Shown one piece after another: positions 245 through 56,680 of a stretch of DNA of 64,000 nt (position 1 is the stretch's first letter; each line of letters starts with the position of its first letter). Below the pieces are notes generated by a model. It saw only the letters and a list, made by a program, of their open reading frames with translations. It was not told the DNA's origin and did not search any database. Source of the stretch: Anthoceros angustus (lineage: Eukaryota > Plantae > Anthocerotophyta); assembly GCA_010909165.1 (NCBI GenBank), contig MU008162.1, positions 248,001-312,000 of the forward strand. The letters are read 5' to 3'. A program made the translations under genes and the position numbers.

Positions 245-2173
245 TCATCCAAAGCCCTTGCCTTTCTTCTCAGATCTCAAGGGAGAGGCTGCCCTCTTTT
301 CTCTTTCCAGGGAGGCCAGCCTCGACCAGCAGCTGTTGATGAGGTCCAGCAGGAGCTGCTTCTTGTTCAGTCGGTAGGAGATGGCCAGATTCCGGGTTGG
401 AGATGCCGCTTCTTCCTTGCTGCTGCGGAGGAGGAGGTCCTGGTCTTCCACAGCTGTGGTTGGGAAGCGGCTGAGCAGCATTGCACAGAGTGCTACCAGA
501 GTTTGCAGGACGTTGGACTCGTTCACAATGCCCAGGGGGGCATCAGGCCCCCAGTCCTGGAGAGCATCCAGGCTCTTGTTTCGTAGGCTGGCAGCATCGT
601 CTGCGAAGAGCACGCGGAGAGCTGCGAGAAGGCGGCCGTCGACTTGCGATCGCCCCAAGGTTGTCTGAACAGGTACCATGCTCATGGGGATCAGCAGGGA
701 AGAGGAGAGGAGATTTGAGAACGAGGTGAGTGTGGTGTTGGCATGAGAGCTTACCATGAGACCTGCACCGGCACCTTGTAGGCGGAGCTGGACGAAGATG
801 GCCTGCTGCCATGGGGCCGGGGAGGCAAAGCTTGCAAGCTTGCTAGGCTGCTTCACACCTGCAGCAGCCCGAGCTTCGTCCAGCATGGACAGCACCACAT
901 CAAACCTGAGATCCACTGTGTCGTGCGGGTTGTTTGGAAGGACGAAGCCGTAGTCCAGGAGAAGAAAGTCGTTGCTCAGAGGACCGTAGTTCAACACGAT
1001 GGGAGCACCTTCAACCAGGTCCTCCTCAGCTACAACCTGTACAAGAAAGAAGCTGTACATTAACAACAACAACACAGCCATGTATACTTCTCTGTTCAGC
1101 TCGTAAATGAGCCAGGTACGTCACCTGGAGAGCGAAATCCCCTCCTTCACCGTCATCCATGTTCTGCTGCTCCAGTCTGGCGTTGGCGTGGAAACTGTGG
1201 TTACACATGTCGACAAGAGGCAGCAGCTTCCGACTGCCGCTTCCATCATCCAGCTGCTTCGAGGTCTGAACTCTGAATGCCCTGCTTGAGACCGCAGCCA
1301 TGGCCCAGCCCAGTGATCCGGCATCCACGTCCAGGTTGCAGAAGGGATGACTTGCGTCATCCAGGCCCCCGAGAACTGAGGGAATGTCATGCTTCGCAAA
1401 CTGGAGCAGGAATTTGCACCTCTTGTTCACCTGCCCACCACCCAGCCCAAGCAAGGATTTCAACATCATCCCAAGGTGGCATGGCACCCACCAACACAGC
1501 CAATTTACATGCTTCTTTCCAGACCTGCTGTATCAAGGGAGGGTACTGCAAACTGGCAATGTCCTCTCCGGAGAAGAAGATGGGCACACTGAAGCGCTGT
1601 GGCAAGATGCTGATGTAAGGCCACCAGAAGGACTCCACCTTGGCCCTCTCTGCCAGCAGCTTGAGGCCCAGCTTGAGCGTCCACAGCTCCTCTGCCACAG
1701 GCTCGAGTCAGAGAGGCTTGCCCGCGGATCCTGTTGCGGCAAAATCAAATCCAGAGCACATCAACCTCCCTCCACGCCGCAATCGGCTCTGCAGCTACCA
1801 GCAGCTTGCAAGAAAGCTCACCTGGCACCCGGTCCGTAAGCCGGCGCAGAGCCCGGTCGGCAGCAGCGTCGGACGCTGCCGGCGGCAGGGACAGCAGCAG
1901 CTGCGAGGGCAGGCTGATGAGCCTGTGCCCCGCCTGCGCAGGCCGGGCAGCCACCAGGCCCAGCCCGTCTCCATCGCGCTCCACCCTCAAGCCCGGCCAC
2001 ACCGCCCCGCCCCCTTGCTGCACCCACTGCACCAGCCTCCCGCCCTCATCCCCCGTGCCACTGCTGCTCCCGCAACAGCGAATTCCGGAACTGCGGAGGC
2101 AGCGGGTCGTGATGGACGCAGCCGCAGCTGCAGCTGCTGGGTGAAACCCGATTCCCAATCCCCGCCTCCCCAT
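245..2173 (-). CDS. SET-domain protein lysine methyltransferase, Rubisco LSMT/SETD3-like (5 exons, probable transit peptide)
   Basis: Spliced ORFs give LKLGLKLLAER..WWPYISILP, LGWAMAAVSSRAF, LLPLVDMCNHS and IVLNYGPLSNDFLLLDYGF (SET N-H and Y-G motifs), followed by an LSMT substrate-binding region. GT-AG introns read at about 1821-1693, 1540-1431, 1124-1037 and 756-671. Start codon uncertain (2173 or 2209). Confidence 0.85.
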
Positions 2174-2373: not shown

Positions 2374-5007
2374 ATGGCAGCCCAGCAGGCAGGGAGTGCG
2401 GCGCTGCTGCTGGCCCCGAGCTGCGGGCATTTGCAGCAGCGGATTGTGGGCGCCCAACAAGTGGTGCCGGGGAATGGCAGCATTAGCAGCACTAGCAGCA
2501 GCAGTGGCAGGAGCAGCGTAGGAGAGGGGTGGTGGAATGGAAAGGGCAGCGGGGGGCTGCATGCAGACAGGGCAAGGCAGGAGCTGCTGTGGAGGCAGTT
2601 CTTTCTGGATCCTTCCATGTGGTGGGACAACAGGTTGGACAAGAAGGGCAGCCGGTCTCCCGACTTCAGGCACAGGGAATCCAGGGATGTGCTCTGGCTC
2701 AACAGCTTCTGCAAGCCTGCATGGGTGGATGAGCAGCTGGCCGCTTGGGACACCACCCTGCCCGCAGGCTGGGGATCCGGAGGAAGGGAGGAAGGGGGTG
2801 CCCAGGCCGTGAGCAGGCTGTGTGACGAGGGGCTGCTCCGTGAGGCTGTGGATGCTCTGGGTGTGCTGGTTGAGAAGGAGACGCGAGTTCCCAACTCTGT
2901 CATCTGCGGGCTGATCAAGAGATGTGTGGCGGAGAAGGATTTGGCTCTGGGGGATCGTGTGCGTCATCTGTCTGCCAAGCTCGGGTACGAAGAGAACACG
3001 TTCTTGGCAAACAACATAGTGCGGATGTATGCTTCTCTGGGGAGGTTGGAGGAGGCCACCGACGTGTTCAGGCAGGTGGCTGATCCGGATGCCTTCACCT
3101 GGTCTGCCATCATCTCTGCTCATGCTAAGCACGGGGAAGCCAGGGAGGCCATCAAGCTGTACCAGGAGATGGAGAGCTCCGGTGTGAAGCCGGATGGGCA
3201 CGTGTTTGTTGCAGCCCTGCAGGCTTGTGCTAGTGCAGCGGACTTGGAGGCTGGGAGGCAGGTGCATGCAGGTGTAGTGGGGTGTGGGTTGGAGCCTAAC
3301 TTGTTTGTGTCCAACGGGCTGGTGGACATGTATGCAAAATGTGGCAGAGTGGAGGATGCACGCAGGGTTTTCGACAGTGCGGTGACGAGGGATGTGGTGA
3401 CATGGAATGCCATGATCGGCGGATATGCTGAGCAGGGGCTGGGTCGGGAGGCGCTGGCTCTGTATGCAGGCATGGCTGAGGAAGGGAGGATTGTGCCTGA
3501 CCGTGTCACGTTTGCCTGCCTCCTCAAGGCATGTGCATGTGCTGGGGACTTCGTGCAGGGGCAGGAGGTGCATGACGAGGTTGTTCGAAGAGGGCTTGAA
3601 GGAGACACCGTGGTTGGCACCTCCCTGGTGGACATGTATGCAAAGTGCGGCAGGGTAGACGATGCACGCAGGGTGCTGGACAGGCTGCCCACTCGAGATG
3701 TGGTGGCATGGACAGCCATGATCGCAGGGTACGCGAAATGTGGCATGCTGGAAGAGGCTCGCAAGTTCTTCGACAGTCTGCCCACCAGGAACGTGGTGAC
3801 ATGGACGGCATTGATTGCAGGATACGCAGAGCATGGCCTGGGGCAAGAAGCACTTGCTCTGTATGAAAAGATGGAGGAGGAAGGGCTGATCCTAGCCAAC
3901 TCCCTCACCTTCGCCTCCCTCTTGAAGGCATGTGCGACGCTGGGTGCTCTCCAGCAAGGCAACCAGCTCCATCTCCAGGTTCTGGAGAGAGGCCTGGGAG
4001 GGGACAAGGTGGTGGGCACCTGCCTGGTGGACATGTATGCCAAGTGTGGGAGGTTAGAGGATGCACGCAGGGTGCTGGACCGTCTGCCCACCAGGGATGT
4101 GGTCACCTGGACAGCCATGATAAACGGGTTCGGGCAGAGCAACGAGGGCCACAAGGCCATCCAGTGCTTCCAAGAGATGATGCAGGAGGGCGTGGAGGCA
4201 AACGAGACCACCTTCACCTGCCTTCTGGTAGCCTGCAGCCACGAGGGGCTGGTGAGCGAGGGGCGGCACTTCTGGCAGTCCATGGTGGAGGAGTGGGGCA
4301 TCAAGCCCACCGTGGAGCACTACAACTGCATGGTGGACATGCTGGGGCGGGCAGGCCATCTGGACGAGGCAGAGGTCATGTTGCTGTCATGTGAGGCCAA
4401 CGACGTGGGGCTCATGGCCTTGCTGAATGCCTGCAAATGCCATGGTGACATACCCAGGGGCACCCGCCTCTTCGAGAAGCTGGTGAGCATGGACTCCCAG
4501 GATGCGTCTGCCTACGTGCTCATGGCCAACATGTACGCAGACGCCGGTAGGTGGGCAGACGTAGAGAGGATCGAGAGGTTGAGAAGGTGTGCAGGAGCTA
4601 GCAAGAAAGCTGCCATGGCAGGCATCGAGGTGGGCAAGCGTGTACATGCATTCGTTGTGGGTGAAGAGAAGGGGGACATATTGTCCAAGGTGAAGAGTGT
4701 GAATAAGCGGTTGAAGGAGGAAGGAGGCCATGTGCCCCACACGGAGCTGGTCCTGAAGGCAGTGTCGGAGGAGGAGAAAGAAGACGAGCTGTGCGGGCAT
4801 GCTGAGAAGTTGGCTCTGGCGTATGGCCTGTTGAACACTCCAGACGGCACAGCTCTGCTGGTAACCAAGAATCTTCGAATGTGCAATGACTGTCACAGCT
4901 CCACCGAGGCGCTGTCCAGGATAGAGAAACGGGACATCGTTGTGAGAGATGCACACCGTGTCCACCGATTTGTGGACGGATCTTGTCACTGTGGTGGCAG
5001 GCCTTGA
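2374..5007 (+). CDS. Intronless PLS-class PPR protein with N-terminal PDF (OSB-type) motif, about 16 P/L/S repeats, E1/E2 and DYW:KP domain ending GRP (candidate organellar U-to-C editing factor)
   Basis: 877-aa ORF with repeats such as VVTWNAMIGGYA / LVDMYAKCG, HAEKLA and CNDCH zinc-site motifs, and C-terminus CHCGGRP. aa 73-109 read WRQFFLDPSMWWDNRLDKKGSRSPDFRHRESRDVLWL. Confidence 0.95.
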   Translation: MAAQQAGSAALLLAPSCGHLQQRIVGAQQVVPGNGSISSTSSSSGRSSVGEGWWNGKGSGGLHADRARQELLWRQFFLDPSMWWDNRLDKKGSRSPDFRHRESRDVLWLNSFCKPAWVDEQLAAWDTTLPAGWGSGGREEGGAQAVSRLCDEGLLREAVDALGVLVEKETRVPNSVICGLIKRCVAEKDLALGDRVRHLSAKLGYEENTFLANNIVRMYASLGRLEEATDVFRQVADPDAFTWSAIISAHAKHGEAREAIKLYQEMESSGVKPDGHVFVAALQACASAADLEAGRQVHAGVVGCGLEPNLFVSNGLVDMYAKCGRVEDARRVFDSAVTRDVVTWNAMIGGYAEQGLGREALALYAGMAEEGRIVPDRVTFACLLKACACAGDFVQGQEVHDEVVRRGLEGDTVVGTSLVDMYAKCGRVDDARRVLDRLPTRDVVAWTAMIAGYAKCGMLEEARKFFDSLPTRNVVTWTALIAGYAEHGLGQEALALYEKMEEEGLILANSLTFASLLKACATLGALQQGNQLHLQVLERGLGGDKVVGTCLVDMYAKCGRLEDARRVLDRLPTRDVVTWTAMINGFGQSNEGHKAIQCFQEMMQEGVEANETTFTCLLVACSHEGLVSEGRHFWQSMVEEWGIKPTVEHYNCMVDMLGRAGHLDEAEVMLLSCEANDVGLMALLNACKCHGDIPRGTRLFEKLVSMDSQDASAYVLMANMYADAGRWADVERIERLRRCAGASKKAAMAGIEVGKRVHAFVVGEEKGDILSKVKSVNKRLKEEGGHVPHTELVLKAVSEEEKEDELCGHAEKLALAYGLLNTPDGTALLVTKNLRMCNDCHSSTEALSRIEKRDIVVRDAHRVHRFVDGSCHCGGRP

Positions 5008-19319: not shown

Positions 19320-21327
19320 ATGGCTTGCACAAGGTTGAGGCTGTGCATGCTTGTGCTGGTGCTTGCGGCATTAGTACTGGTCGGGGGAGCTGATGGAGCA
19401 AGCCTGCAATTGGGATTTTACCTGAAGAAGTGCCCGACTTTGGAGGCCATTTGTCTCACTGTGATGCGAGAAGCATTGGCCAGGGATGTCGAGAACGCGG
19501 CACACATTCTCCGGCTCTGGGCACACGATTGCTTCGTGAACGTAAGCCTTGCTATGGACAGCTGGATTCATCTTTGTTGACACCTTGAAGTTCCCACGTG
19601 CTTTGTGTGTGTTTGTGTGCCATGCTCTCAGTTGGCGTGTATGTCTTGATTTCCTCGAACCCAGGGCTGTGACGCTTCCATCCTTCTGGATCCAGTTCGA
19701 GGCCGGCCACTAGTGGAGAAACAGTCCCCACCCAATCTCACTTTGAGGGGATTCGAGATCATCGACGACGCAAAAGCTAGAATAGTGGCTGCATGTCCCA
19801 ACGCTCAGGTTTCTTGCACGGACATCACTCTGTTGTTGACAAGGAATGCAGTCGTTCTGGTAAGCTCACTTCCTGCTTGAAGATGTTGCCCACTGCCCAC
19901 GTTGGACATGTATGTTGAGGCACTTGCTCGAAATTGAAATCACCCACAGCCTGCGTCGCTTGCAGACAGGAGGGCCCTTCTGGGACGTGACTCTGGGCAG
20001 GAGAGATGGCAACCGATCCTTGGCTTCTGACACAGGAGACCTGCCTAACCCTTTCTTGAACCTGAGTGGCCTCAATGCCCAGTTCAGCAAGAAGGGGCTC
20101 TCGCTTACAGATCTGGTGATTTTGTCAGGTACTTTTGAATAATTCCTCCCTTGTCAGACCAGTTAGCCAGTGATTGCAAATTTGGGATCCTGATGAGCCC
20201 ACCTTGAATGTTCAATGAATGGTGGATGTTTGTTGTCTCCAGGGGCGCACACCCTCGGTTTTTCCCACTGCAATTCAATCCAGAACCGGCTCTTCAGCCC
20301 GAACGGCAGCGTGAGCGTTGATCCCGGCATGAACAAGTCTCTGGCCAAGATCCTGCTCAAAAAGTGTCCTCGGAAGGGGTTCAACAATAACCACCCAACG
20401 GCCGGCTCCATGTTGGACCTGTCCACACCCGACCTGTTTGATAATCGCTACTACAGCGATATCCAACAGTCCTTCGGGGTCTTGGGATCCGACCAGATGC
20501 TGTACACCACCCCCCGCTTGAAGAGGCTGGTGGATCAGCTGGCTGCCGAGCAGGATGTCTTCTTCAACAACTTCGTCACCTCCATGATCAAAATGAGCAA
20601 GATTGGAGTGAAGACGGGCACAAATGGAGAAATCAGAGCGAACTGCAGGGTGGTAAACCCTCCAGCACCCCCCTCGTCGCACCCGCCTCCACCTCCTCCC
20701 CGCTCTACCGCTGCTACTCCTCCTCCTGTTATCTCCTCTCCTCCTTCCCAGCCACCTCCACCCCCTGTTCTCGTGCCTCCTACTCCTCAGCCACCTTCTC
20801 CTCCTCCTCCTTCTCAGCAACCTCCAGCTCCTGCTGCCTCCGCTACCCCTCCACCTGATCAGACTGTTGTCTCTCCACCTCCAGCTGATCAGACCGTTTC
20901 ATCACCTCCTCCTCCTCCTCCTCCTGATCAGACCGTTTCCTCACCTCCTCCAGCTGATCAGTCTGTTTCACCACCTCCTCCTCCTCCTGATCAGACCCTT
21001 TTCTCACCTCCTCCTGATCAGACCCTTTTCTCACCTCCTCCAGCTGATCAGACTGTTTCACCACCTCCTCCTCCTCCTGATCAAACTGTTTCACCACCTC
21101 CTCCTTCTCCTGATCAGACTGGTTCCTCACCTCCTCCAGCTGATCAGACTGTTCCCTTTCCTCCTCCTGCTGATCAGACCGTCTCATCCCCTCCTCCTGG
21201 TGATCCTATTGTCCTCACTCCCCCTCCTGCCGCTGCTGCTCCTCCTCCATTTGCTTCTGTCATATCCATCTCAACGGGTGTATCTATTTCCACTCCTGGC
21301 CCTCCTCCTCCAAGTGAGTCAACATAA
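19320..21327 (+). CDS. Class III secretory peroxidase with ~220-aa Pro-rich extensin-like C-terminal extension; exons 19320-19541, 19665-19859, 19966-20128, 20243-21327
   Basis: Signal peptide, RLWAHDCFVN|GCDASILLD (distal Arg/His), LGRRDG, LSG|AHTLGFSHC (proximal His), TPDLFDNRYY and F..SMIKMSKIGVKTGTNGEIRANCRVVN, in the classic 3-intron layout. Confidence 0.95.
20868..21215 (+). repeat. Coding tandem repeat, about 11 units of CTGATCAGAC..TCACC(TCC)n encoding PPPP(A/P)DQTVS
   Basis: GATCAGAC/GATCAAAC-type cores recur every ~30-39 bp within the peroxidase tail. Confidence 0.9.
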
Positions 21328-41317: not shown

Positions 41318-44300
41318 TCAGGACTCCCTGTTGGTCACAATGTTGAGCTGGTGCATGGCATCCAGGAGAGTGTCCATGTTTAAGGGCTTGTTTATGTATG
41401 CGTCCATCCCTGCGTCCATGCACTTCTGTTGGTCGCTTTCCATACCTCCGTGTGCTGTGAGTGCAATGATGGGGAGGTGGCCGCTGCCTTCGATCTCCCT
41501 TATCCTCACGGTGGCTGTGTAGCCGTCCATGACAGGCATCTGTTACCAAGAATGAATTAAAAGGTTAGGCACATCACAACACGCCATCCTGCCTCCGTCA
41601 TCACTACAATATATTCTTTTCGTCCCAAGGCCTTCCCAGGTGCAGGGACAAGCTTACCTGACAATCCATGAGGACAAGGTCGAAGACGTTTTGGGAGCAG
41701 CTGGGCTCACCGGGTACCTTAGCTGAAGGACTAGCAACAAGCTCAGCCACCATCTCCACAGCCTCTTTACCATTACCAGCCACCTTGACCAGGGCACCCT
41801 CCTTCCTCAGCAACTGACTGGCGATTCTCTGCATGACCACAGTATCCTCCACCAGAAGAATTCTGACCCCGGCCAATCTGCCTCCCGTCTCCTCAGCGAC
41901 AAAAGGCTTGGGAGCAGCTGCTTCTCTGGGAGCCCGCTTCGCAGGTAATATAGGACCCACTTCAATCCCTTCCGCCTCCACGATCTCCAGCTGCACATGG
42001 TCCAGGGGACCTGCAGCACTCTGTACCGTCCACCCTCCATTTCCATTTCTCCTCTCCTCACTATCTCTAACTGGGCTATCTTTGCTACAAGGAACTGCAG
42101 GGATGTCGGTGCTTTGTCTACCTCTATCAGGGCTGCTTTTGCCGGACTGGATCTGAGGAGGTACTGTCTCTATGGGCTCCTTCTTGCCTTCCGGACCTTG
42201 CCCTTGCCCTTGCCCACTGCTGGTGCTAGTGCTGGAATTGTTCAACCTGGAAGGAGAAGGAGGCCGCAATAAAAAGCTCCTTCGCTTTTCTCCAGCCACA
42301 TCCTTCCGGTACCTGCTGTTGATCTCCTCAGCCAGAGCTGCCAGACGAGAACCGTGAACCGGTTTCGAGAGGGTGGAGTCGGAGCGGGTACGAAGACTCT
42401 GCCATGCTGCCGAGGCAGCGTACCCAGCATCAGGGGAGACAATCCACACAAGGTGGAGGAAGTAGCCGTGGGTGCTGCTGGACCGCCTGTAGTTCTCCAA
42501 CTCTGCGCGGAACTTGCCGGGCTGGAACTCCTTGCCCTGCGGAATGAGAGCCACGTCGATAAGAGCAATCACCACAGGGAAGACGTCCTGTACATTTCCC
42601 TTGGATGCCTCCGGCAAGCTGCTGCAGCTGGAAATTCTGGGAGGGGAGTATCTGGAAGGAGAAGTCTGGCGGTAGGAGACCCGAGGAGAGACGTGGTGGG
42701 GGTAAGATTGGGGTGACGACTGCGGGGAGCCGTGATGCAGGATGTTGGATATGATACAGCGGAAGGTGGTAGGGATGTCATTCCACTCCGGTACGTCCCA
42801 TACGACTGCTCCTCTCTTCTCCATCCAAGTGTACACCAGCTGCTTGCCAGCCTTGCCCTGCATGGCCAGCAGTACCTGTACATCTCCCTCCTCCCTCCTT
42901 GCTGAGAGAGACAGCCGGCTGTCCTCCTTGATCAGATGTTGAGCCAAGGTGAGGGGACGGATGCTCAGACTTTTCCTGAAATTGTCAGCAGAGCTCTCCC
43001 TGCCCTTGCCCGAAATGAAGAAGCGCCGGGTAGACCGTGGTGGCACTTCCTTGGCAGCCTTCTGGAAGGTGAGGTCGAATTTGATGAGTGTGCCCGGCTC
43101 CTGTTTGTTGGCAACCCAAATGTGCCCACCCATAATATGTACCTGAAAGGGGCACAAAATTAGACGGCTTGCCTTCCAGGAGATGCGAAGAGAATTCCAA
43201 GACAACAAACAGACAAGACGCCTGTGATTGAAGATGGGGCCATTCTGTCTTCACTCTGGCCCACCCAGGAATCAAATCAAACGGGCCCTAGCAGAACAGT
43301 AGTGTAGGCAGAGAAAGAGATATGGAGATAGAGATGGTGAATGAGAGTGCACCAGTGATCGGACGACGGCGAGGCCAAGCCCTGTACCACCATGTACACG
43401 ATGGACCCTGGAACTTGCTTGCACAAAATTGTGGAATACAGCTTCCCTTCTGGCAGGAGGTATACCAATCCCCGTGTCATCAACTTCGAACTCGTACTCC
43501 ACGCTGTCCTGGGCCACTGTTGCTCCGTTTCTGACATTACCTGACGTGGGTTCGTGCCACCTGAAGACTCCACACTGAGCCATTCTCCTGAGCCAGCCCT
43601 GGGGCCGGCGGGGCATCCTATCGTCCACGGAAGGAGCATGCACCGGCTTAGGCCAGGCACGCACAACCACCTGCCCGCCTTCTCCAGTGAACTTCACAGC
43701 GTTGCTCAGGAGGTTGCTCAGGACCTGCTTGACATGCCGGGAATCCCCATTTACCCATTTACAGTTGTCTATACTGTCGTCAGGAAGGTCCAGGACAACC
43801 TCCACATCCTTCTTCAGGCCAACAACAGCGAATGTGTCCACCACCTCCTCTAGAGTGCTGACCAAGTCGAAATCAGTTGGGTTGAACTCCAACTTGCCTC
43901 CTTCGATATTGCTCAGATCTAGGATGGAGTTCATGATACCTGTTTGCAGAAGAAACACACACACGATACGGAGTTAGGAGAGACAGAAGCTGGATGCTTA
44001 CAAAACTTGAACACAGTCAAACGGCGACGAAGATTTCTTGCCTAGAAGACTGTTTGCACAGGACTTCATTTGGACCATGCTAGCTTCCAGCTCCGAAGCG
44101 ATGGATGCCTTGTCCGAGAGTATCATGTCTATCAACCCGATGATGGCGGCCAACGGAGTTCGCAGATCATGACTCATGTTGGCAAAAAACTGATGCTTGT
44201 GATGGGTTCGCTTCTCCACCGACTTGACAGCCTTCACTTGAGCTATGTATGACTGCTCTCTTTGCATGGCTCCACTCACCCCCTTGGTCAGCAACAGGAC

Positions 44301-46312
44301 CAGAAAACAACCCACCAGCACAAGGCCAAGGGCTACACACGCGAATATTAGCAGGAGTCGATGGCCACCATAACCCAGCATGCTCTTTCGAGGGATCACA
44401 ACCACAGCAACCTGCACACAGTCGAACGCAGCTTTCAGCACCAGTTTCAAGACATAACACACAGAAGACAAAAATAAAACCCAAGAGTGAAGATACTTGC
44501 CAGGCATTTGCAGGAGGTGTCCAGAGGCACGCTCTCTATCCTATACCGGCCTCCATTAATCTTGGCATTCTCCGCCACGTAATGCTCAACAGCCAGGCTA
44601 CTCATATTCCCCAGCCTTACATCCAGATACTGCGCTGCAGCAGCCACCACAGGGTTGTTGGAGTACTCCGCTTTGAGCTGCTGCTGAGGAGCCACGGGTG
44701 GAGGGTTGGGAAGTCCGGATTGCACCACCAGATGGCCCTGCTCGTCGGTAACAAAGAAGTCTCCGTTGTGCAGATCCTGCTTGCCCAGCCAATAGGCTAC
44801 GCTGGACAGAGACGTGGAAGCGAGCATTACTCCAGCTGGTGTCAGGGAACCTGGAAGCACAAGGGCTTGCATGGACAGGAGAAGCACGTCCCCGTCTGCT
44901 GTCATGGAGCTGGTCCAGAAGACACGACCCGAGTCATTCAAAGCCTCCTGCACCAGAGAAGGATTCGGAAGAAACAGGAAGCAGTCCAGAGAAGAGGACG
45001 ACGTCCCATTGGTGGCCCGCCCAGTGCTCTGATCCACCGGCTGGAAGTACCAGTCGTAGGAAGGAGGGGTGATGCAGAGAGGTGATGTGGCAGTGTAAGA
45101 GGACTGCACGCTCGAAGGGCCAGCAAAGAGAAGAGACGTGTTCCTGGTGCTACTATAGGCAAAAAACTCTCCGGTTGCAGCCAGATAGCCCAGAAGTCCA
45201 GTGTCAGGCCTGGTAGCGTACGCGATCCAGAGATAGGGAGCAACCTGCAGATGACAGACACACATCCTCTTCAGTCTTGCAAAACAGCAGAAACATGATA
45301 ATTCCGTCTTAAAAAGTGCCGAGGACTGGAGAGCCCCGTAACCTGTTGCAGCAGCTGCTGGTAGTCAGAGATCGAGGAGGACGTTAGAAGTGATGAAGCA
45401 AGAAAGCGTGCCAAAGCCTGAGCCGAGGCTGCGTTGGTCTCCAAGCCGCGCTGGAAGCTGTCCTGCGCTGCCTGCAGAATCCCGCCCTGCGCAGTCAGGG
45501 ACGCGGAGGTGACAGACCTCCGCAGCTCGTATAAGGATGCGTGGTAGGCCGAGACGGCGAACACCACGACCACCAAGGTCACCATAATCTGCACCACCCA
45601 CGAACATACACACACCCACCATGAGCTCCACCGCAGATCAAGCAGGAAGCAGGAAGGAGAAGGCTGGAGCCTGGCCGACCATGAGTGCGACTCTGGAGCA
45701 GAACATGGGCGAGTGCGCAATCCTCCACGCTGCTGATCCGGACGCCGCCGGCGCACACGCATCCACGAAATTGGTGAAGCAGTCCTGATGGGCTCCTCCT
45801 CCTCCTCCACCTCCTACTCCTCCTCCTCTGCTGTCCTCAATTGTTCCCAGCCCGCACATCCTGAACCCGTCTCCCGCACCCCCGCATTTGGCCCGCCCGG
45901 ATCCCATACTGGCAGCCAAGGTGGGCAATCCCGCAACCCCCTGCTGCTGCTGCTGTGGTTGCTGCTGGAGATGCAGCTGCGAAGGCGGCTGCCGGGAGGA
46001 CCCCCCTCCGCGGTCCAGGGCGAGGGCGGTGTTGGTGGTGGAAGTCCTGGGGCTGTCGTGCGTGACATCGCTGGTGTAATCGCTATCGTCCACAGCCGCC
46101 CCGGAGCTGGAAGACAGCACTCCCAGCGGATCCCCCCGCATCCCCTGGATGGTGTAGTGCACGCAGCTGGAGCCCAGGTTCATGCAGAAGCTCCCCCAAT
46201 ACAGCCGCTCGTCCCTGTGCCCGCCCCACCTCTCCCTCTGCTCCTGCCCTGGTCCCTGCCCCTGCTCCTGCCCTGGTCCCTGCCCCTGCCCATCCCCCTG
46301 CTGATGCGCCAT
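41318..46312 (-). CDS. CKI1: CKI1-like hybrid histidine kinase (TM, extracellular sensor, TM, HisKA, HATPase, receiver)
   Basis: VAPYLWIAYAT..FFAYSSTRNTS and WYFQPVDQSTGR resemble the CKI1 sensor. ANMSHDLRTPL, QVLSNLLSNAVKFT, EVDDTGIGI, HGGTGLGL, LVLMDCQ|MPVMDGY and KP are kinase/receiver motifs. CKI1 rather than AHK1 is judged from the sensor motifs only. Confidence 0.85.
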
Positions 46313-49300
46313 GGACTCCGCAATGCGCCTCATCCTCTCCCAATTCCCGCCATCTCAGCTCCCTACCTCCTACCTAAGGCTCCCGTCGCCCATCTCCCTG
46401 GTGGGCTCAACTTCACCTCAACCAGGCCCAAGATTTGCCTCACCTCCAGCCACCGGCAGACCCATAAACAGACAGATCCCCACGACGCTCATCGCGGCGG
46501 GAGCAGCAACTCCTCTTCCCGGAGCTACATGCTGCAAAAATCCCAACCCAAACCTGTTAAATTTTTTTTTCTCTTCTTCCGTTGCCCAAACTTCGCGACT
46601 CGGGGACGGCACGCTTCCACAGAGCTGGAGGGGGCGGATTGCCGGGTCAGGGATGGAGAACCCAATGCCCAGGCCGAGGCCGAGCTACATCTGCGAGGAA
46701 GCAGGCAACCAGGAGCAGCTCAGCGCAATTCCACAGCACTCCATTCCATTCCCTTCCCTTCCCGGGTCAATCCGATCCCGCCGGCGCAATGCGACCAGGC
46801 AGGCGCATTCACGCCGACTCGGGGACGGGGCAGCGGGAAGCACGGGCACCATAAACACACGCAACAAAGCCGCACAATCGCGAAGTTGGGAAACCTGCAA
46901 CGCCAGGCCTCCGGGAGGAGCACAAGCGGCAAAAGCCGCTGCTTGGGCCGCTCATGAAGTGGTGTGCGCTCCTGGCGGGGGGCAGCTCTGGCAGCGGCAG
47001 CCGGAAGCTTCGCGGAAGGAGCGCAGCAGGGCCAGGACGGCGCAAGTACATACATCCAAGCGAGGGAGGCCAGGGAGATGGCAAATTGCGCCACAGGCCC
47101 ACAGGCGGGAACGACAGAGAGCGGGCAGACAGCCGGGGCGTGCGCACGCCTACCGCGACTCACTCGACTCAAAAAACGACTCCCAAACGACTCAAACGAC
47201 TCAAAACCACGCACGCTACGCACTCCCGACCTCGGCCTCGGCCTCGGCTGCGAGCACGCAGCGGGTCAAAAAGTGGGGCGTGGCGCGTGCCGGGGATTTT
47301 GGCAAAGAAGTGGAAGGAAGGGGAAGGGCAAGGACGAGGGCGGGGCCCAGCGCCGGGCCCCGCCGGGTGGGTGGGGCCTAGTAGCGGGCCCCGCCCGTGA
47401 TGGTGGGGCCCGCGGGATGCACGAATGGGACCAGATTGGAGAGGGGCGGGGATTTGCGAGCCTGGGAGCCTGAGAGCCTGGTGGGACTTGTTTGAAATTA
47501 AAAAAACGCCCTGGCCGGGTTGGCTTCGTGGGCCCTGCCATATCCACCGCCACCGCCACCGACACCGCCCACCCGCCTTAACCATGGCCTTAACGGCCGC
47601 GCCCGCGTCGTGTCGTGCTTCCCCTTGCCGGAGCCCGACCTTGTTTCACGACTCTGGGCATTCGGGATTCGCGATTCGGGATTCGCGATTCGCGATTCGC
47701 GAATTCAAGTTTCGCGATCGCCGCCCTCACTTATCACGCCGCGCAACGGTAATTTGTAATTACCCCTACCCGGCCCGGCCCCGGCCCCGGCCCGCGCAAG
47801 CCAACCCAAGCCAAGCGGGTTCAAAGCAAACAAAGCTTGTACCGGATCCGGATCCGGATCCGCCTCCGCCACCGAGGGCCAAGCCTCATTATGCCGCCTT
47901 GTCGTTGCAACGTTGCTGTGATCCAGCCTTTGCGTGGTAGGGATTTTGTGATTTGGTTTGGGGGAATGATTTGTCCTTAACCCAACCGCTCTTTTAACAC
48001 CTGCATTGGCGTTTTGATTAATGTGCAACAAGATTCCAAGTTGCTCTAGCGCAAGTACATTGTGCAGCCATTGCACGGCTACAGTTTATGTACATACACA
48101 TTTAGTGGTGTTGAACTTTCATCACATTTGGTACAAAGCGGAAGGACTCAAAACCAGAATATTGCAGGGTTCTTGTGTCTCAAGGTCTTTCTTGGACAAC
48201 CGCACCAATGACATTTTGCGTGAGATCACCCCTTGTATTGAATTGACTTGGGGTGCCTTAGAAAGGACCCAGGTCGACATGTGTGGATGTTTTCTTGTCG
48301 CATAGTACATAAAATGAAAAAGATGACCCCACACGCCTCTCACGATCACACTCTCAGTACACTTTCTTCTTAGTAAGTTGAGAAAGCCGACCAACCCATG
48401 CGCCTCAAAGTCTCTCTCCTGGGAAACCAGCGTGCGGACGATTCATATGTACTTCGGAAGAAAAGAAAGACGACCACAGCCTATGCACCTCAAGGTCTTT
48501 TTTGAAGTACAAGCCTGCTCCTAGAAAACCACGGGACCAACTCATGCGACCGTTTCTTGTTAGTAAGATGAATAAGCCAAATTCGAATGAAAAGGAAATC
48601 TCGTTTATTGAAAATCTATTTTAGAGTTGAAGGGTGGAAAATGATATTGAGTCAGTGTGTACGTTCAAGCTTGATATACCTTATTCATTAGTAGCCCATG
48701 TTAGCTTGTACACATATGGCTATTATGTATCTTAGCACATTAGCGCAGCCACTTATCTTTCCCGCTGTGCTGATTGCTTTAAATGTTGTGAGCATGTGAT
48801 GATTCTAGTCCTTACAAGTGATAATGGAGAAAATATGAAAGAAATCAATCTTAGTCTACTAGGGGCCGTGTTACTTGATTGTTATGATCGTTGTGAGATG
48901 TGATGTGTTTCTTATCACCAAGAACAATGATGAAAAGAATTGAAAGAAGACATCAAGAGTAAAAATGGGTGCATTACCAAACGTTCTTAGGCCAAAACAG
49001 ATAGTGTTTTATAAATGTCGTACGATGTGATGTGTTTGTTATTGCTATGAACAATGAGGGAAAGAAATTGAAAGAAACCATCAAGGGTAAAATGGATACA
49101 AATATTCTTCAGTAAAAATAGATACCTACAAACAATGGAGACACTTGTCAATGTGGATTACTTACCAATGCATGAAAAGACATGATTGTCCATTTGGAAT
49201 ATAACCAAAAGTTTACATTTCGATGGGAAGTCTAAAAAACTCTGTTCCCCTCATCCATAGCAATGGACTTGTATTTGCTGACATGTCGAGGTTAAGTTGG

Positions 49301-53402: not shown

Positions 53403-55448
53403 CTAAGCGGGTGTAAGAACTGGGTCGGTTGCCTTTTCCGTGTAGAAGTTCTTGCCATCCGTCTTCAGGAGGTACCGTTGTCCATTGACGACAGCATACA
53501 TGGTACCTGCAGCCATAACCCGATAACTCCAATTAGCCTTTGAGGGGCATCGTGGATTTTGAAGGATTGGATGTGAAGAATCGTACCAGGAGCTATGTAA
53601 TCCACAAGGTGGTCGGGTGTCCAGCTACCGCTACCGCAGGGGCAAGCAGCGTGAATCTGAATGCCAGTCACAACGGCATAGTCGGCCTTCTTCGGGTCAA
53701 CCACTTTGGAGATCAAATCGTCGATATCCTCCCTAATGACCTGCAAAGCCGATACCAATTGAACGTCTGGAAGCAGATCTTAACAGGGAAGTTTGCTAAG
53801 CAAGTAGAGGGCATCACCTGTTCAGCGGCCTTTGTCACATCAATAAGGCTCACTTTGGTCTTGTTCTTTGCAGCGCTCTGCGGATACTGCGGGTTAAGTA
53901 GTGAGCGAATGTTTGGCCATGATTTTACTGTAGATACACTGGCAAGAATGAGCACTAACTGACCCAGTTCAGCAGCTTGGCCTTGAGCAGGCCGAACTCC
54001 ATGTCGTCGAGGGGCAGAGGTCCTGAGTGCGGAGAGGCACCCCGTTCAATCTCGCCCTTGACTGCGAGGAGAGCTGCACAGGCAGTGGAAGGCTTGGCCT
54101 GGCCCTCTCTCTTGACAAGGCCCTCGTTACCTGTAAGAAGGCATGGGATGTCAGTGCGGTGCAGAAGGGAAGGGATAACTTACTCACTGAAAGGCAGGCA
54201 GTAGCCTAGCACAAAGTAAAGAGTAAGATCAGAGCACTGCTTACCTTGCTCATCAACACCAATGTGAGGGAAGGCGAAAAACACATCTGCACAGCAAGAG
54301 AACAGATCAATGTAAGCGACAATAACTGAAAGTAGAAGGTCCAGCCTTGACTGCTTCAAAAGTAGGCAACGTATGACAGGAAGCTCACACTTCTCTCTGT
54401 CCTGCTTGGCATCTGGCGCGTGGCCAATGCCAGCCTTGAACCCAACTTTCCCACACACGATAGCACCACCAAGACCAGCGATGTTGAAGGTGTCACCGTA
54501 GATCTGAGACAAACAGTCCATGTTCAACCAAAGGAGCAGGACAGCAACGAAGTACGAAACGAGTAACCCAGCTCCCAGATATACCCACCTCTTCCACAAG
54601 GCCGATCAGTGGTCTTGTGATCTCATCTCTGCAAGTACTAACCAACGCAATGGTGTTCTCCCTGCCTCAACAAACAATGCTGGACATGAGGAACTAGCTA
54701 CGGCAACCCCAATCCAGAGACATTGCCTAGCAATCCGACAACAGAGACAGCCACAGCGTGCAGGCCCCATACTTGGTGAAGCCAAGGCCAGCCAGAGCTG
54801 AGCCCACGCTCTTCACGAACTTGTTGTCCACAACAGCCACAGAGAAGTCGGTGGAGATCTTCTTCAACGTCGCAGGAGCGAGTTCCCGGCGGGGCTTCTG
54901 CAGCTTGGAGAGGGGAGCCGGCGGGGCAGCCGGGGCAACGGGGGCCGGGGCAGCACCACCCCGGGTCTTCAGAGCAGCGAAGATCCCCACAGCCGCCAAG
55001 GCCGCCGCCACGTACAGGAAGACAGGCGACTTCCCAGAGCCCTCTACGGGCGCAGAGGGAGGAGGAGCTTCCACGGAAGTGGAAGCGGAAGCGAAGGGCA
55101 TGGTCTCCCGGACTGCAGAACACAGCGCCACCAACCAGGCCACCCCGTTCGATCAGACACGCAAACCCACCACCCAACGATTTCCGACAGTCAATATGCA
55201 GGCAGAGAGAAACAGGGCGGGGCAGCAGAGGCACCAGAGGCAGCATAGCTCTGCTGCGGCTGCGCCTCCAGCTTCAGCTCCTCCCCAACGGACTGCGAGT
55301 TCGCAGACGCGGAGGCTGACACTACATGGAGCCTGCGGGAGCCTGAGAGACGCAGAGGATCAACCCCGCGGGCAGGGAGGGCAGGCGAGAACCTGCGGAC
55401 GTCGGCGGAGAGAGCAAGGCCCGACATGCTGCACATTCCGGCTGCCAT
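53403..55448 (-). CDS. LCIB: Limiting-CO2-inducible B/C family (theta/beta-type carbonic anhydrase fold) protein with transit peptide and N-terminal hydrophobic helix, about 9 exons
   Basis: Spliced: GLGFTK|ENTIALVSTCRDEITRPL, TFNIAGLGG..CGKVGFKAGIGHAP, EKYVFFAFPHIGV, PSTACAALL, SLIDVTKAA, EDIDDLISKVVDP.KADYAVVTGIQIH, VDYIAPG|TMYAVVNG. Colinear with Chlamydomonas LCIB. Confidence 0.92.
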
Positions 55449-56499
55449 AGCTGCTTTCCTGGATACGCAGCTGGCCAGCTCCCCTCATCAAGCAGGGGAA
55501 CGTTCATAAACTGGTGAGAAGAGCCCCCAAGCTGTGGTCCCTTGAAGCCTGGTGACAAGTTGCTTGCCGCAGCCAGGCCTCATCAGCACAGCTCCTCCCT
55601 GCACCACCCACTTCAGATGATGCTCGTATTCTACCCGGTCGGGATTTCCCAGCCACTAATCCGGCCTGTAATCCGTTTCACTATCCGTGTCAACATCGGG
55701 CTGGAATCTGCCTTATTCCTGCCCGAGCCACAACCACCCCAGACCCCGCGCCCGCGGATAGACCCAGCCTCGTGGCCACCAACCACCTGTCCCGTACCCC
55801 TCCCGCCTTCCACCCACTTGCTCCTGCCTACTTGCGTCGGAAACTGCAGGCTGTCCCGCCCTGCCCCTCCCGTTTTGCTTGGCTGCTGTTTCCGCTCTCT
55901 GCTCCGCCTGCAGCTGCTGGGTTCTCTAGTCCTGGACGCGAATCCGTGGCCACGAGAAGCAGTCGCCATCCTTCATGCTTCCTGCTGGCGCTGGTTTGCG
56001 CTTCCCTCTTCCTGGTTGGCGGAGTGGTAGTTCGGTGTGGCGCTTCCATCAGTTTCTATCTCCTTTGAGACTGTAGAGCACAGTAGTAACTAAAATTGCA
56101 TATGCTCCTCCCTGCAGGAGGCAGACTGTTATCCTCCTACAGGTGCGACAGTTCCTTCTTGGGTAGCACTGAGCGGATAACCTAAAGGCTTCCTGGCCCG
56201 TGCACGCCCTGCTTGAGATACCTATCCAATTTTCCTTTTCACCAGTCCGTCCAACATTCTCGGAGCATCCTCTTTGGCTGCCATACTTTGTGCATGCGTC
56301 TTCTTTTACTCTGAAAGCTGTTACGACATCAGCCTCATGAAAGGTGAGAGTTCTTCCTTGTTATTGTATCTCCAAGTGAAGCTGCTTCCCCTCCTCCAAA
56401 GCCAGGGTACCCACACCTCCTCTGCAAACCCGGGTACCCACACCTGCATTTGCTTGGAGGTGATACGCAAACGTCTCACATTTCGGTGCCTGCGTGGGG

Positions 56500-56680
56500 T
56501 CATCCAGGAGCATCCGGTGAGCCTCAGGTGCTGAATCATGCACCTCTAGGCATCCAGGAGCATCCGGTAAGCTCCAATTGCTGAATTACGCAGCTCTAGG
56601 CACAAAAACCCATCTTCGAGAAACATCCGGTGACCTCCAAGTGCTGAATCATGCAGCTCCAGGCACAAAAACCCATCTCT
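56500..56680. repeat. Imperfect tandem repeat (CATCCGGT.A.C..CA..TGCTGAAT.A.GCA.CTC.AGGCA), 3 copies
   Basis: Directly visible, period about 48-70 bp. Confidence 0.75.

What the first reader, a model, noticed from the sequence alone, without database searches (positions are those of the whole stretch)
54900..55448. LCIB with a single predicted transmembrane anchor and intact metal ligands
Seen: after the transit peptide comes PVFLYVAAALAAVGIFAALK (about 54968-55027), then a Pro/Ala linker (GGAAPAPVAPAAPPAP), then the LCIB domain with CRDE, FPH and TAC ligand motifs intact. Established: Chlamydomonas LCIB/C is a soluble stromal CO2-recapture protein that relocates around the pyrenoid, and hornworts are the land plants with pyrenoids and LCIB. 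Inference: this land-plant version is fixed to a chloroplast membrane and acts as a carbonic-anhydrase CO2 trap at the envelope. I recall envelope localisation being reported for Anthoceros LCIB, so the feature may be partly known.
Basis: partly seen in the sequence, partly recalled or inferred. Interest (0 to 1): 0.72.

Follow-up and report, generated by a model that had tools for sequence, protein, structure and literature searches.

The report
Membrane-anchored LCIB carbonic anhydrase gene
This land-plant (hornwort-type) gene encodes the CO2-capturing enzyme LCIB with a built-in membrane-spanning helix and flexible tether, which probably explains why hornwort LCIB sits on the chloroplast envelope, and green algae related to land plants carry the same anchor module.

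Summary
On the minus strand, a 9-exon, 425-aa LCIB gene (55448-53403, all introns GT-AG) encodes these parts in order:
- a transit-peptide-like N-terminus;
- a Ser/Pro-rich stretch;
- an uncharged 18-residue hydrophobic core (helix aa 101-120, window 55026-54967);
- a Pro/Ala linker;
- an LCIB_C_CA domain with the Cys/His/Cys zinc ligands intact (C195, H255, C279).

AlphaFold2 on exon 2 predicts a 21-residue helix exactly there (pLDDT about 80-84), followed by an unstructured linker.

Two 2024 preprints already show that Anthoceros agrestis LCIB lies at the chloroplast envelope and overlaps TIC40. Neither mentions a transmembrane helix. The localisation and the CO2-trap model are therefore known. 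The anchor itself appears undescribed in the searchable literature.

The module is not a land-plant invention. The same collinear arrangement occurs in Klebsormidium nitens, Closterium, Mesotaenium and a pedinophyte. Volvocine LCIB lacks the helix and has a long C-terminal tail instead.

My best reading is a TIC40-like N-terminal anchor in the inner envelope, with the enzyme facing the stroma. Which face of the membrane it occupies is unproven. No other hornwort LCIB could be retrieved, so conservation within hornworts is untested.

Interest is moderate.

The parts
55235..55448 (-). Exon 1. It holds the start codon (55448-55446) and a transit-peptide-like presequence (aa 1-71): Ser/Ala/Arg-rich, with only 4% acidic residues in the first 50 aa.
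   Evidence: blastp aligns the model from residue 2 onward to the Klebsormidium-type protein P0009.
55113..55234 (-). Intron 1, 122 nt, GT..AG, phase 1.
   Evidence: Joining across it restores one open frame from the ATG through the helix.
54773..55112 (-). Exon 2 (aa 72-185). It encodes the pre-helix Ser/Pro stretch, the helix, the linker and the first two helices of the LCIB domain.
55027..55098 (-). Ser/Thr/Pro-rich pre-helix segment, aa 77-100 (50% S+T+P). It includes a FASAS motif that aligns with FASVS in Closterium and other streptophyte sequences.
   Evidence: The comparison with the Ser/Pro-rich insertion signal of TIC40 comes from PMC2667645.
54967..55026 (-). Predicted transmembrane helix, aa 101-120, with core V102-L119.
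   Evidence: Kyte-Doolittle 19-residue value 2.28 and shuffle control. AlphaFold2 helix at aa 101-121, pLDDT about 80-84. It aligns with the hydrophobic segments of homologues.
54892..54966 (-). Basic residues K120 (last residue of the helix part) and R122, then the Pro/Ala linker, aa 121-145.
   Evidence: 56% A+P. AlphaFold2 gives no secondary structure here, pLDDT 50-58.
54589..54661 (-). Exon 3, carrying the CRDE motif: zinc ligand C195 (54633-54631), D197 and R201.
   Evidence: Pfam PF18599. PDB alignment to CrLCIB, CrLCIC and PtLCIB4. Codon check.
54389..54503 (-). Exon 4, carrying the IYGDTFNIAGLGG block of the LCIB core.
54245..54286 (-). Exon 5, carrying the FFAFPH motif: zinc ligand H255 (54266-54264).
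53964..54130 (-). Exon 6, carrying the STAC motif: zinc ligand C279 (54080-54078).
53818..53886 (-). Exon 7 (23 aa).
   Evidence: It tiles the Klebsormidium protein in order.
53587..53740 (-). Exon 8, the C-terminal part of the LCIB domain.
   Evidence: Pfam 29.5 bits, profile positions 172-216..
53403..53506 (-). Exon 9 and the stop codon (53405-53403). There is no long C-terminal tail of the kind seen in volvocine LCIB.

Best explanation
The window holds the single-copy-type LCIB gene of a land plant, which by inference is a hornwort.

The precursor would be imported into the chloroplast through its N-terminal transit peptide. The retained module (Ser/Pro-rich stretch, 18-21-residue hydrophobic helix, Lys/Arg, then a Pro/Ala linker of about 25-30 residues) would act as an N-terminal signal-anchor. 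It would fix the LCIB carbonic-anhydrase domain to the inner envelope membrane on a flexible tether.

I infer that the domain faces the stroma, with the short N-tail in the intermembrane space. I infer that insertion follows the TIC40-like post-import route. At the envelope the enzyme would hydrate incoming or leaking CO2 to bicarbonate in the alkaline stroma, as in the published hornwort model.

The anchor module was inherited from streptophyte-algal ancestors rather than invented in land plants.

Shown here: the gene structure, the helix, the linker, the ligands and the shared module in algae.
Shown by others: envelope localisation of A. agrestis LCIB.
Inferred: that the helix is the anchor, the topology, the insertion route and the enzyme activity.
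For: Gene model:
- 9 exons, all introns GT-AG and 77-122 nt long, one open frame of 425 aa.
- The exon translations tile Klebsormidium and Closterium proteins in order with contiguous junctions.

Family:
- PF18599 scores above its cut-off on the ORF holding exons 4-5 (42.9 bits) and the ORF holding exon 8 (29.5 bits).
- PDB matches to CrLCIB 5K5W, CrLCIC 5B5X and PtLCIB4.
- C195, H255 and C279 fall in columns that are at least 90% conserved across 49 rows.

Helix:
- Kyte-Doolittle value 2.28, with only 72 of 20000 N-terminal shuffles reaching it.
- AlphaFold2 helix at aa 101-121, pLDDT about 80-84, followed by an unstructured linker.

Topology hint:
- The 30 residues after the helix hold 6 K/R and 1 D/E. 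The 30 residues before it hold 2 K/R and 3 D/E. By the positive-inside rule (established knowledge) this puts the C-terminal side in the stroma.

Route hint:
- The 24 residues before the helix are 50% S+T+P, with a Pro at the helix start.
- TIC40 needs a Ser/Pro-rich region in front of its transmembrane domain to reinsert from the stroma, and post-import proteins keep prolines there (PMC2667645).

Localisation:
- LCIB::mVenus overlaps TIC40 and forms a ring under the envelope.

Ancestry:
- The collinear module is present in K. nitens P0081, Closterium P0042, P0093 and P0096, Mesotaenium P0087 and pedinophyte P0036.
- An AU test does not reject a clade of the window protein with the Klebsormidium and zygnematophyte sequences (p = 0.415).

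Land-plant origin:
- A PPR-E-DYW ORF lies at 2374-5007.
- Among land plants LCIB is reported only from hornworts (PMC8075897).
Against: - No dedicated transmembrane or targeting predictor was available.
- AlphaFold2 on the full Klebsormidium homologue left residues 1-144, including its hydrophobic segment, at pLDDT below 50 with almost no helix.
- Several algal segments are Gly/Ala-rich and only marginally hydrophobic, with Kyte-Doolittle values of 1.5-1.8.
- Confocal overlap with TIC40 cannot tell an integral from a peripheral protein, nor the stromal face from the intermembrane space.
- No transcript or other hornwort sequence could be retrieved.
- In-frame GT..AG pairs that would remove the helix exist within exon 2, for example 55047-54967, so alternative splicing is not excluded by sequence alone.
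- The window protein sits on a long branch and its placement in the tree is unresolved.
Confidence: 0.6

Rival explanations
1. The helix is a stop-transfer signal. It arrests in the TIC channel, the N-terminus stays in the stroma, and the LCIB domain is left in the intermembrane space. There it would equilibrate CO2 and bicarbonate between the two envelope membranes rather than trap CO2 in the stroma.
For: - Stop-transfer is the route described for single-TMD inner-envelope proteins, and the helix itself is what arrests translocation there (PMC5853536).
- The helix core has no proline and contains two Phe and one Tyr. Stop-transfer TMDs tend to lack Pro and to be rich in aromatic residues.
- Published imaging cannot separate the two faces of the membrane.
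Against: - The charge bias places the C-terminal flank on the stromal side.
- The Ser/Pro-rich pre-helix region with a Pro at the helix start resembles post-import proteins, not ARC6 or PHT.
- Hydration of CO2 is driven by the alkaline stroma in the published models. An intermembrane-space enzyme would not trap inorganic carbon.
Confidence: 0.13
2. The hydrophobic segment is the h-region of a cleavable second targeting signal, of the thylakoid-lumen or envelope-sorting type. It would be removed, so mature LCIB would be soluble or only peripherally bound.
For: - The arrangement of transit peptide followed by a hydrophobic stretch is also the layout of bipartite lumen signals.
- An LCIB-family enzyme is reported in the diatom thylakoid lumen (reference listed).
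- Residues G114-I-F-A117 would formally satisfy the -3/-1 rule for a type I signal peptidase (my reading of the sequence).
Against: - There is no twin arginine and no Ala-x-Ala after the helix.
- K120 and R122 follow the helix directly. Basic residues early in the mature part hinder export (established knowledge, recalled).
- The hydrophobic core is 18 residues, long for an h-region.
- The tagged protein is at the envelope, not in thylakoids, and forms a thin layer.
- The basic residue after the helix and the linker are conserved in algal homologues.
Confidence: 0.1
3. The helix anchors LCIB in thylakoid membranes, for example the outermost thylakoids close to the envelope, rather than in the inner envelope.
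For: - Stromal intermediates with a TMD can be routed to thylakoids, and TMD identity decides between envelope and thylakoid.
- Light microscopy has limited resolution at the chloroplast edge.
Against: - The signal overlaps TIC40, not chlorophyll.
- It forms a ring below the envelope.
Confidence: 0.05
4. Gene-model artefact. Either the real mRNA skips the helix through an exitron-like in-frame splice, or translation starts at M76, so that exon 1 is not coding.
For: - In-frame GT..AG pairs span the helix.
- An ATG at 55101 precedes the helix.
- No transcript from this species could be found.
Against: - Homologous transcripts from Klebsormidium-type algae (a Logan 1773-nt contig and Trinity ORFs) keep both the presequence and the helix.
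- GC3 in the helix codons is 0.80 against 0.66 for the whole CDS, so the segment looks coding.
- The candidate internal introns are GC-rich and lack a pyrimidine tract.
- A protein starting at M76 would carry an ER-type signal-anchor, which conflicts with the chloroplast localisation.
Confidence: 0.04

Closest known systems
Anthoceros agrestis LCIB (AagrBONN_evm.model.Sc2ySwM_368.2612.1; Robison et al. and the Szovenyi-group preprints, 2024)
   Same: It is an LCIB-family protein of a hornwort with conserved zinc and catalytic residues. It has been localised experimentally to the chloroplast envelope together with TIC40. It is proposed to act as an envelope CO2 trap.
   Different: I could not obtain that sequence, so identity or orthology with the window gene is inferred, not shown. 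Short stretches of the window CDS were not found in the held supplement. The preprints do not describe a transmembrane helix or a tether.
Chlamydomonas and volvocine LCIB/LCIC (PDB 5K5W, 5B5X)
   Same: Same fold family (PF18599). Same CRDE, FFAFPH and ACGAL-type ligand motifs. About 35-45% identity in the domain.
   Different: The volvocine proteins have no hydrophobic segment between the transit peptide and the domain (Kyte-Doolittle 1.0-1.4). They carry a C-terminal tail of about 100 aa that the window protein lacks. They are soluble and relocate around the pyrenoid.
Klebsormidium nitens KFL_002100040 (P0081) and Closterium LCIB homologues (e.g. P0042)
   Same: Collinear architecture: presequence, Pro-rich stretch, hydrophobic helix with Pro at its start, basic residue, Ala/Pro linker, LCIB domain, no C-terminal tail. 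The Klebsormidium type has the highest identity to the window protein, 48% over the domain.
   Different: The algal helices are more Gly/Ala-rich and less hydrophobic. Their localisation is unknown. Some zygnematophyte paralogues lack the helix (P0006, P0088, P0084).
TIC40 (inner-envelope protein with an N-terminal anchor)
   Same: Layout of transit peptide, then a Ser/Pro-rich region, then a single TMD. By recalled knowledge the large C-terminal domain of TIC40 faces the stroma. TIC40 was the co-localisation marker for hornwort LCIB.
   Different: There is no sequence homology. The insertion pathway for LCIB is untested.
Diatom theta-CA (Pt43233) and PtLCIB3/4
   Same: LCIB-family zinc enzymes. 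The PtLCIB4 motif CSDEVTRPL aligns with the window's CRDEITRPL.
   Different: The diatom lumenal enzyme uses a different targeting solution. PtLCIB4 has Ser where the window and the green-lineage proteins have Arg. The functional meaning of that difference was not checked here.

Membership tests
LCIB/LCIC beta-type carbonic anhydrase family (Pfam PF18599 LCIB_C_CA) | Domain match above the Pfam gathering score | tested here: met
   The ORF holding exons 4-5 scores 42.9 bits and the exon 8 ORF scores 29.5 bits, against a cut-off of 25. Exons 3 and 6 give sub-threshold matches at the expected profile positions.
LCIB/LCIC beta-type carbonic anhydrase family (Pfam PF18599 LCIB_C_CA) | Cys-His-Cys zinc ligands | tested here: met
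   C195, H255 and C279 align with the conserved Cys, His and Cys of CrLCIB (5K5W), K. nitens, Volvox and Closterium. The columns are at least 90% conserved across 49 rows. Codons verified.
LCIB/LCIC beta-type carbonic anhydrase family (Pfam PF18599 LCIB_C_CA) | Catalytic Asp next to the first Cys (C-x-D-E motif) | tested here: met
   CRDE at aa 195-198. The C, R, D and E columns are nearly invariant.
LCIB/LCIC beta-type carbonic anhydrase family (Pfam PF18599 LCIB_C_CA) | Measurable carbonic anhydrase activity | not testable with these tools
   This needs an enzyme assay or complementation with the soluble domain (about aa 146-425).
Hornwort LCIB (envelope-localised) | Encoded in a hornwort genome | tested here: inconclusive
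   A PPR-E-DYW gene and a class III-type peroxidase in the window point to a land plant. Among land plants LCIB is reported only from hornworts. No hornwort sequence was available for direct comparison.
Hornwort LCIB (envelope-localised) | Localisation at the chloroplast envelope | not testable with these tools
   Published for A. agrestis. Not measured for this gene.
Single-pass inner-envelope proteins of the TIC40 type (post-import insertion) | Transit peptide, then a Ser/Pro-rich region, then one TMD near the N-terminus | tested here: met
   aa 1-71 are transit-peptide-like. aa 77-100 are 50% S+T+P. The helix spans aa 101-120. The criterion comes from PMC2667645.
Single-pass inner-envelope proteins of the TIC40 type (post-import insertion) | Soluble stromal intermediate, with the C-terminal domain in the stroma | not testable with these tools
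   Only the charge bias (6 K/R after the helix, 2 before) speaks for a stromal C-terminus.
Bipartite thylakoid-lumen signal (Sec/Tat) | Twin-Arg or basic n-region, short h-region, Ala-x-Ala cleavage site | tested here: not met
   There is no RR. The h-core is 18 residues. There is no AxA, and K120 and R122 follow directly. This is my reading of the sequence; no predictor was run.

The most novel reading that the evidence does not exclude
The presequence, Ser/Pro stretch, helix and Pro/Ala tether form an ancient, portable envelope-anchoring cassette of LCIB. It was already present in the streptophyte-algal ancestors of land plants, and possibly earlier, since a pedinophyte has it. On this reading an envelope-tethered CO2 trap is the ancestral state. 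The soluble, pyrenoid-relocating LCIB/LCIC of Chlamydomonas, which lacks the helix and has a C-terminal tail, is the derived one. The cassette (about aa 1-145) would then be a ready-made tag for placing a carbonic anhydrase on the inner envelope of crop chloroplasts.
Probability: 0.4. Interest if true: 0.65.

Novelty: new variant of a known kind. Interest (0 to 1): 0.45.

Why it matters
Reaction-diffusion modelling cited by the hornwort papers says that, when thylakoid stacks are the diffusion barrier, LCIB works best at the chloroplast envelope. Hornworts are put forward as the blueprint for a simple, passive CO2-concentrating mechanism in crops.

Knowing which sequence element puts LCIB on the envelope turns a microscopy observation into a testable, transferable part. 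The element can be deleted, swapped or fused to a reporter.

The analysis also raises a question the published model takes for granted: whether the enzyme faces the stroma or the intermembrane space.

The presence of the module in Klebsormidium and zygnematophytes suggests that envelope-tethered LCIB is older than land plants. This bears on whether the carbon-concentrating chassis is ancestral.

Tried and rejected
Searches for other hornwort LCIB proteins, all without result:
- The representative search with the ORF holding exons 4-5 gave 50 hits, none above about 55% identity and none from a hornwort.
- Word searches with P0009, with an alignment that included the window's exon translations, and with exon 2 alone gave no hornwort protein. 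Exon 2 alone gave no hit at all.
- Exact look-ups of the PPR-DYW ORF and of the exon 2 ORF found nothing on record.

Other attempts that failed or gave little:
- I searched the held supplement of the Bonn-strain preprint for six short stretches of the window CDS and found none. The plasmid sequences are apparently images.
- The published Nature Plants version and Jin et al. 2016 are not held. Statements about PtLCIB4 residue numbers and the S47R mutant rest only on PDB entry names and alignments.
- Exon 6 alone found no PDB match. The third ligand was placed by multiple alignment instead.
- AlphaFold2 on the full K. nitens protein gave a confident domain but an uninformative N-terminus.
- The quick tree left the window protein unresolved on a long branch, so I make no claim about its exact sister group.
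All searches used exon pieces.

Rejected:
- The plus-strand ORF 54758-55450 and the other overlapping ORFs are by-products of GC-rich sequence.

The window is a land-plant contig, not human.
Full report
**What is in the sequence.** The feature lies on the minus strand. Reading 55520-53300 in reverse complement and joining open frames at GT..AG boundaries gives a 9-exon gene. The exons are:
- 55448-55235
- 55112-54773
- 54661-54589
- 54503-54389
- 54286-54245
- 54130-53964
- 53886-53818
- 53740-53587
- 53506-53403, which includes the stop codon

The CDS is 1278 nt and encodes 425 aa. Introns are 77-122 nt and less GC-rich (0.44-0.60) than the CDS, which has GC 0.59 and GC3 0.66. The exon translations tile the Klebsormidium and Closterium proteins in order, with contiguous junctions. 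tblastn finds no second copy in the window.

**The observation.** The hydrophobic segment PVFLYVAAALAAVGIFAALK is aa 101-120, window 55026-54967, in the middle of exon 2.
- It is preceded by a 24-residue stretch that is 50% Ser/Thr/Pro.
- It is followed by TR and a 56% Ala/Pro linker that runs to about aa 145.
- It is the only part of the protein with a 19-residue Kyte-Doolittle mean above 1.6 (maximum 2.28).
- Shuffled N-terminal regions reach that value in 72 of 20000 trials.
- AlphaFold2 on the exon 2 translation, with 15 homologous N-terminal regions as alignment, predicts a helix at aa 101-121 (pLDDT about 80-84). Residues 122-150 have no secondary structure (pLDDT 50-58). Two helices follow that begin the LCIB domain.

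Pfam PF18599 is matched above its cut-off.

**Whose gene it is.** The window also holds an intronless 877-aa PPR-E-DYW ORF (2374-5007) and a class III-type peroxidase piece. PPR-DYW editing factors are characteristic of land plants (established knowledge). Li et al. 2020 report LCIB in hornworts and in no other land plant (PMC8075897). A hornwort origin is thus a reasonable inference, but it is not proven. No hornwort protein is reachable in the collections, and exact look-ups failed.

**What is already known.** Two 2024 preprints localised A. agrestis LCIB.
- Robison et al. found LCIB::mVenus at the chloroplast edge, overlapping TIC40::mScarlet, and concluded that it is 'membrane-bound'. They argue from reaction-diffusion modelling that an envelope position is optimal when thylakoids are the diffusion barrier.
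- The second preprint saw a thin ring under the envelope and proposed the same role.
- Neither the main texts nor the held supplements mention a transmembrane helix, anchor or hydrophobic segment in LCIB.
- Full-text searches for LCIB with 'transmembrane' plus Anthoceros or Klebsormidium found nothing that describes one.
- The journal version of Robison et al. is not held, so I cannot exclude that it is mentioned there.

**The anchor module is older than land plants.** I scanned the region upstream of the LCIB domain in all full-length homologues retrieved.
- A hydrophobic segment (Kyte-Doolittle 1.6-2.7) followed by a basic residue and an Ala/Pro-rich stretch is present in Klebsormidium nitens (P0081) and three Klebsormidium-like transcripts. 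It is also present in many Closterium paralogues, in Mesotaenium (P0087), in several unnamed streptophyte-like transcripts and in a pedinophyte (P0036).
- An alignment of these N-terminal regions is collinear with the window's exon 2. The shared order is a FAS(V/A)S motif, a Pro-rich stretch, the helix (usually with a Pro at its start), K/R, the Ala/Pro linker, and then the start of the domain.
- Volvocine LCIB (P0027, P0069, P0072, and the CrLCIB crystal construct P0075) has no such segment. The full-length volvocine proteins also carry a long C-terminal tail that the window protein lacks.
- Some zygnematophyte paralogues also lack the helix.
- In a quick maximum-likelihood tree the window protein is a long, unresolved branch whose highest identity (48%) is to the Klebsormidium type.
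- An AU test does not reject its grouping with the Klebsormidium and zygnematophyte sequences (p = 0.415). This permits inheritance of the module but does not prove it.

**How it most likely works.** The layout matches TIC40: transit peptide, Ser/Pro-rich region, single TMD and, by recalled knowledge, a large C-terminal domain facing the stroma.
- TIC40 is first imported into the stroma and then reinserted. The Ser/Pro-rich region in front of its TMD is required for this, and prolines in front of the first TMD mark post-import proteins but not stop-transfer ones (PMC2667645).
- Stop-transfer, in contrast, leaves the N-terminus in the stroma (PMC5853536). For LCIB that would strand the enzyme in the intermembrane space.
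- The charge distribution argues for the C-terminal side being stromal: 6 K/R against 1 D/E in the 30 residues after the helix, and 2 K/R against 3 D/E before it.
- I therefore favour a TIC40-like anchor with the N-tail in the intermembrane space and the C-terminal domain in the stroma. The catalytic domain would sit on a flexible tether of about 25-30 residues at the stromal face. There the alkaline pH drives CO2 hydration, as the published models assume.
- These steps are inference. Nothing here shows that the helix is retained, is integral to the membrane, or has that orientation.

**Weak points.**
- No dedicated transmembrane or transit-peptide predictor was available.
- AlphaFold2 on the whole Klebsormidium protein gave a confident domain (pLDDT above 90 from about residue 180) but an N-terminal 144 residues below pLDDT 50 with almost no helix. 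Structural support therefore exists only for the window's own, more hydrophobic, segment.
- In-frame GT..AG pairs that could excise the helix exist in exon 2, so RNA evidence is needed.
- The window has Arg in C-R-D-E, like CrLCIB/C, where PtLCIB4 has Ser. I could not read Jin et al. 2016, so I draw no conclusion about activity.

**Verdict.** Two things appear to be new relative to the searchable literature. First, the envelope localisation has an obvious sequence basis in a helix-plus-tether cassette. Second, this cassette is shared with streptophyte algae and so is not a land-plant innovation. A specialist would not find this very surprising. It is useful, though, because it makes the anchoring mechanism, the membrane topology and the portability of the cassette directly testable. 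I rate interest at 0.45 and novelty as a new variant of a known kind.

Noticed in passing
window 2374-5007 (+): Intronless 877-aa ORF with PPR repeats, an E motif and a DYW deaminase domain. It is an organellar RNA-editing factor of the land-plant type.
   Followed up: partly
window 245-1081 (-): ORF with a Rubisco LSMT substrate-binding domain (PF09273, E = 1.8e-14). It is probably one exon of a SET-domain methyltransferase gene.
   Followed up: no
window 20215-21327 (+): ORF whose first 110 residues match the C-terminal part of the plant peroxidase domain (PF00141).
   Followed up: no
window 41604-43208 (-): 534-aa ORF with a weak, sub-threshold match to the start of a response-regulator receiver domain.
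   Followed up: no
window 56390-56445 and 56501-56602: Two short tandem repeats (27 bp x 2.1 and 50 bp x 2.0) about 1 kb upstream of the LCIB start codon, in the presumed promoter region.
   Followed up: no
window 45788-47400: The most GC-rich part of the window (0.63), with long overlapping ORFs on both strands and no Pfam match.
   Followed up: no
P0001 (Mesostigma viride, 866 aa) and P0036 (Pedinophyceae sp. YPF-701, 774 aa): Proteins with two LCIB domains in tandem behind an N-terminal hydrophobic segment. In the tree the two domains of each protein are each other's closest relatives, which suggests independent internal duplications.
   Followed up: partly
P0108 (MMETSP transcript, 695 aa): An LCIB domain fused to ankyrin repeats, with an N-terminal hydrophobic segment at residues 23-41.
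   Followed up: no
window 55095-55081 (FASAS, aa 78-82) and alignment A2: A FAS(V/A)S motif about 20 residues upstream of the helix is shared by the window protein, Closterium and other streptophyte sequences. It could mark a processing or sorting site.
   Followed up: no
P0069, P0027, P0072 versus the window protein: Volvocine LCIB proteins carry a C-terminal extension of about 100 residues. It is absent from the window protein and from the Klebsormidium and Closterium homologues. Presence of the tail and presence of the N-terminal helix appear mutually exclusive in this sample.
   Followed up: partly
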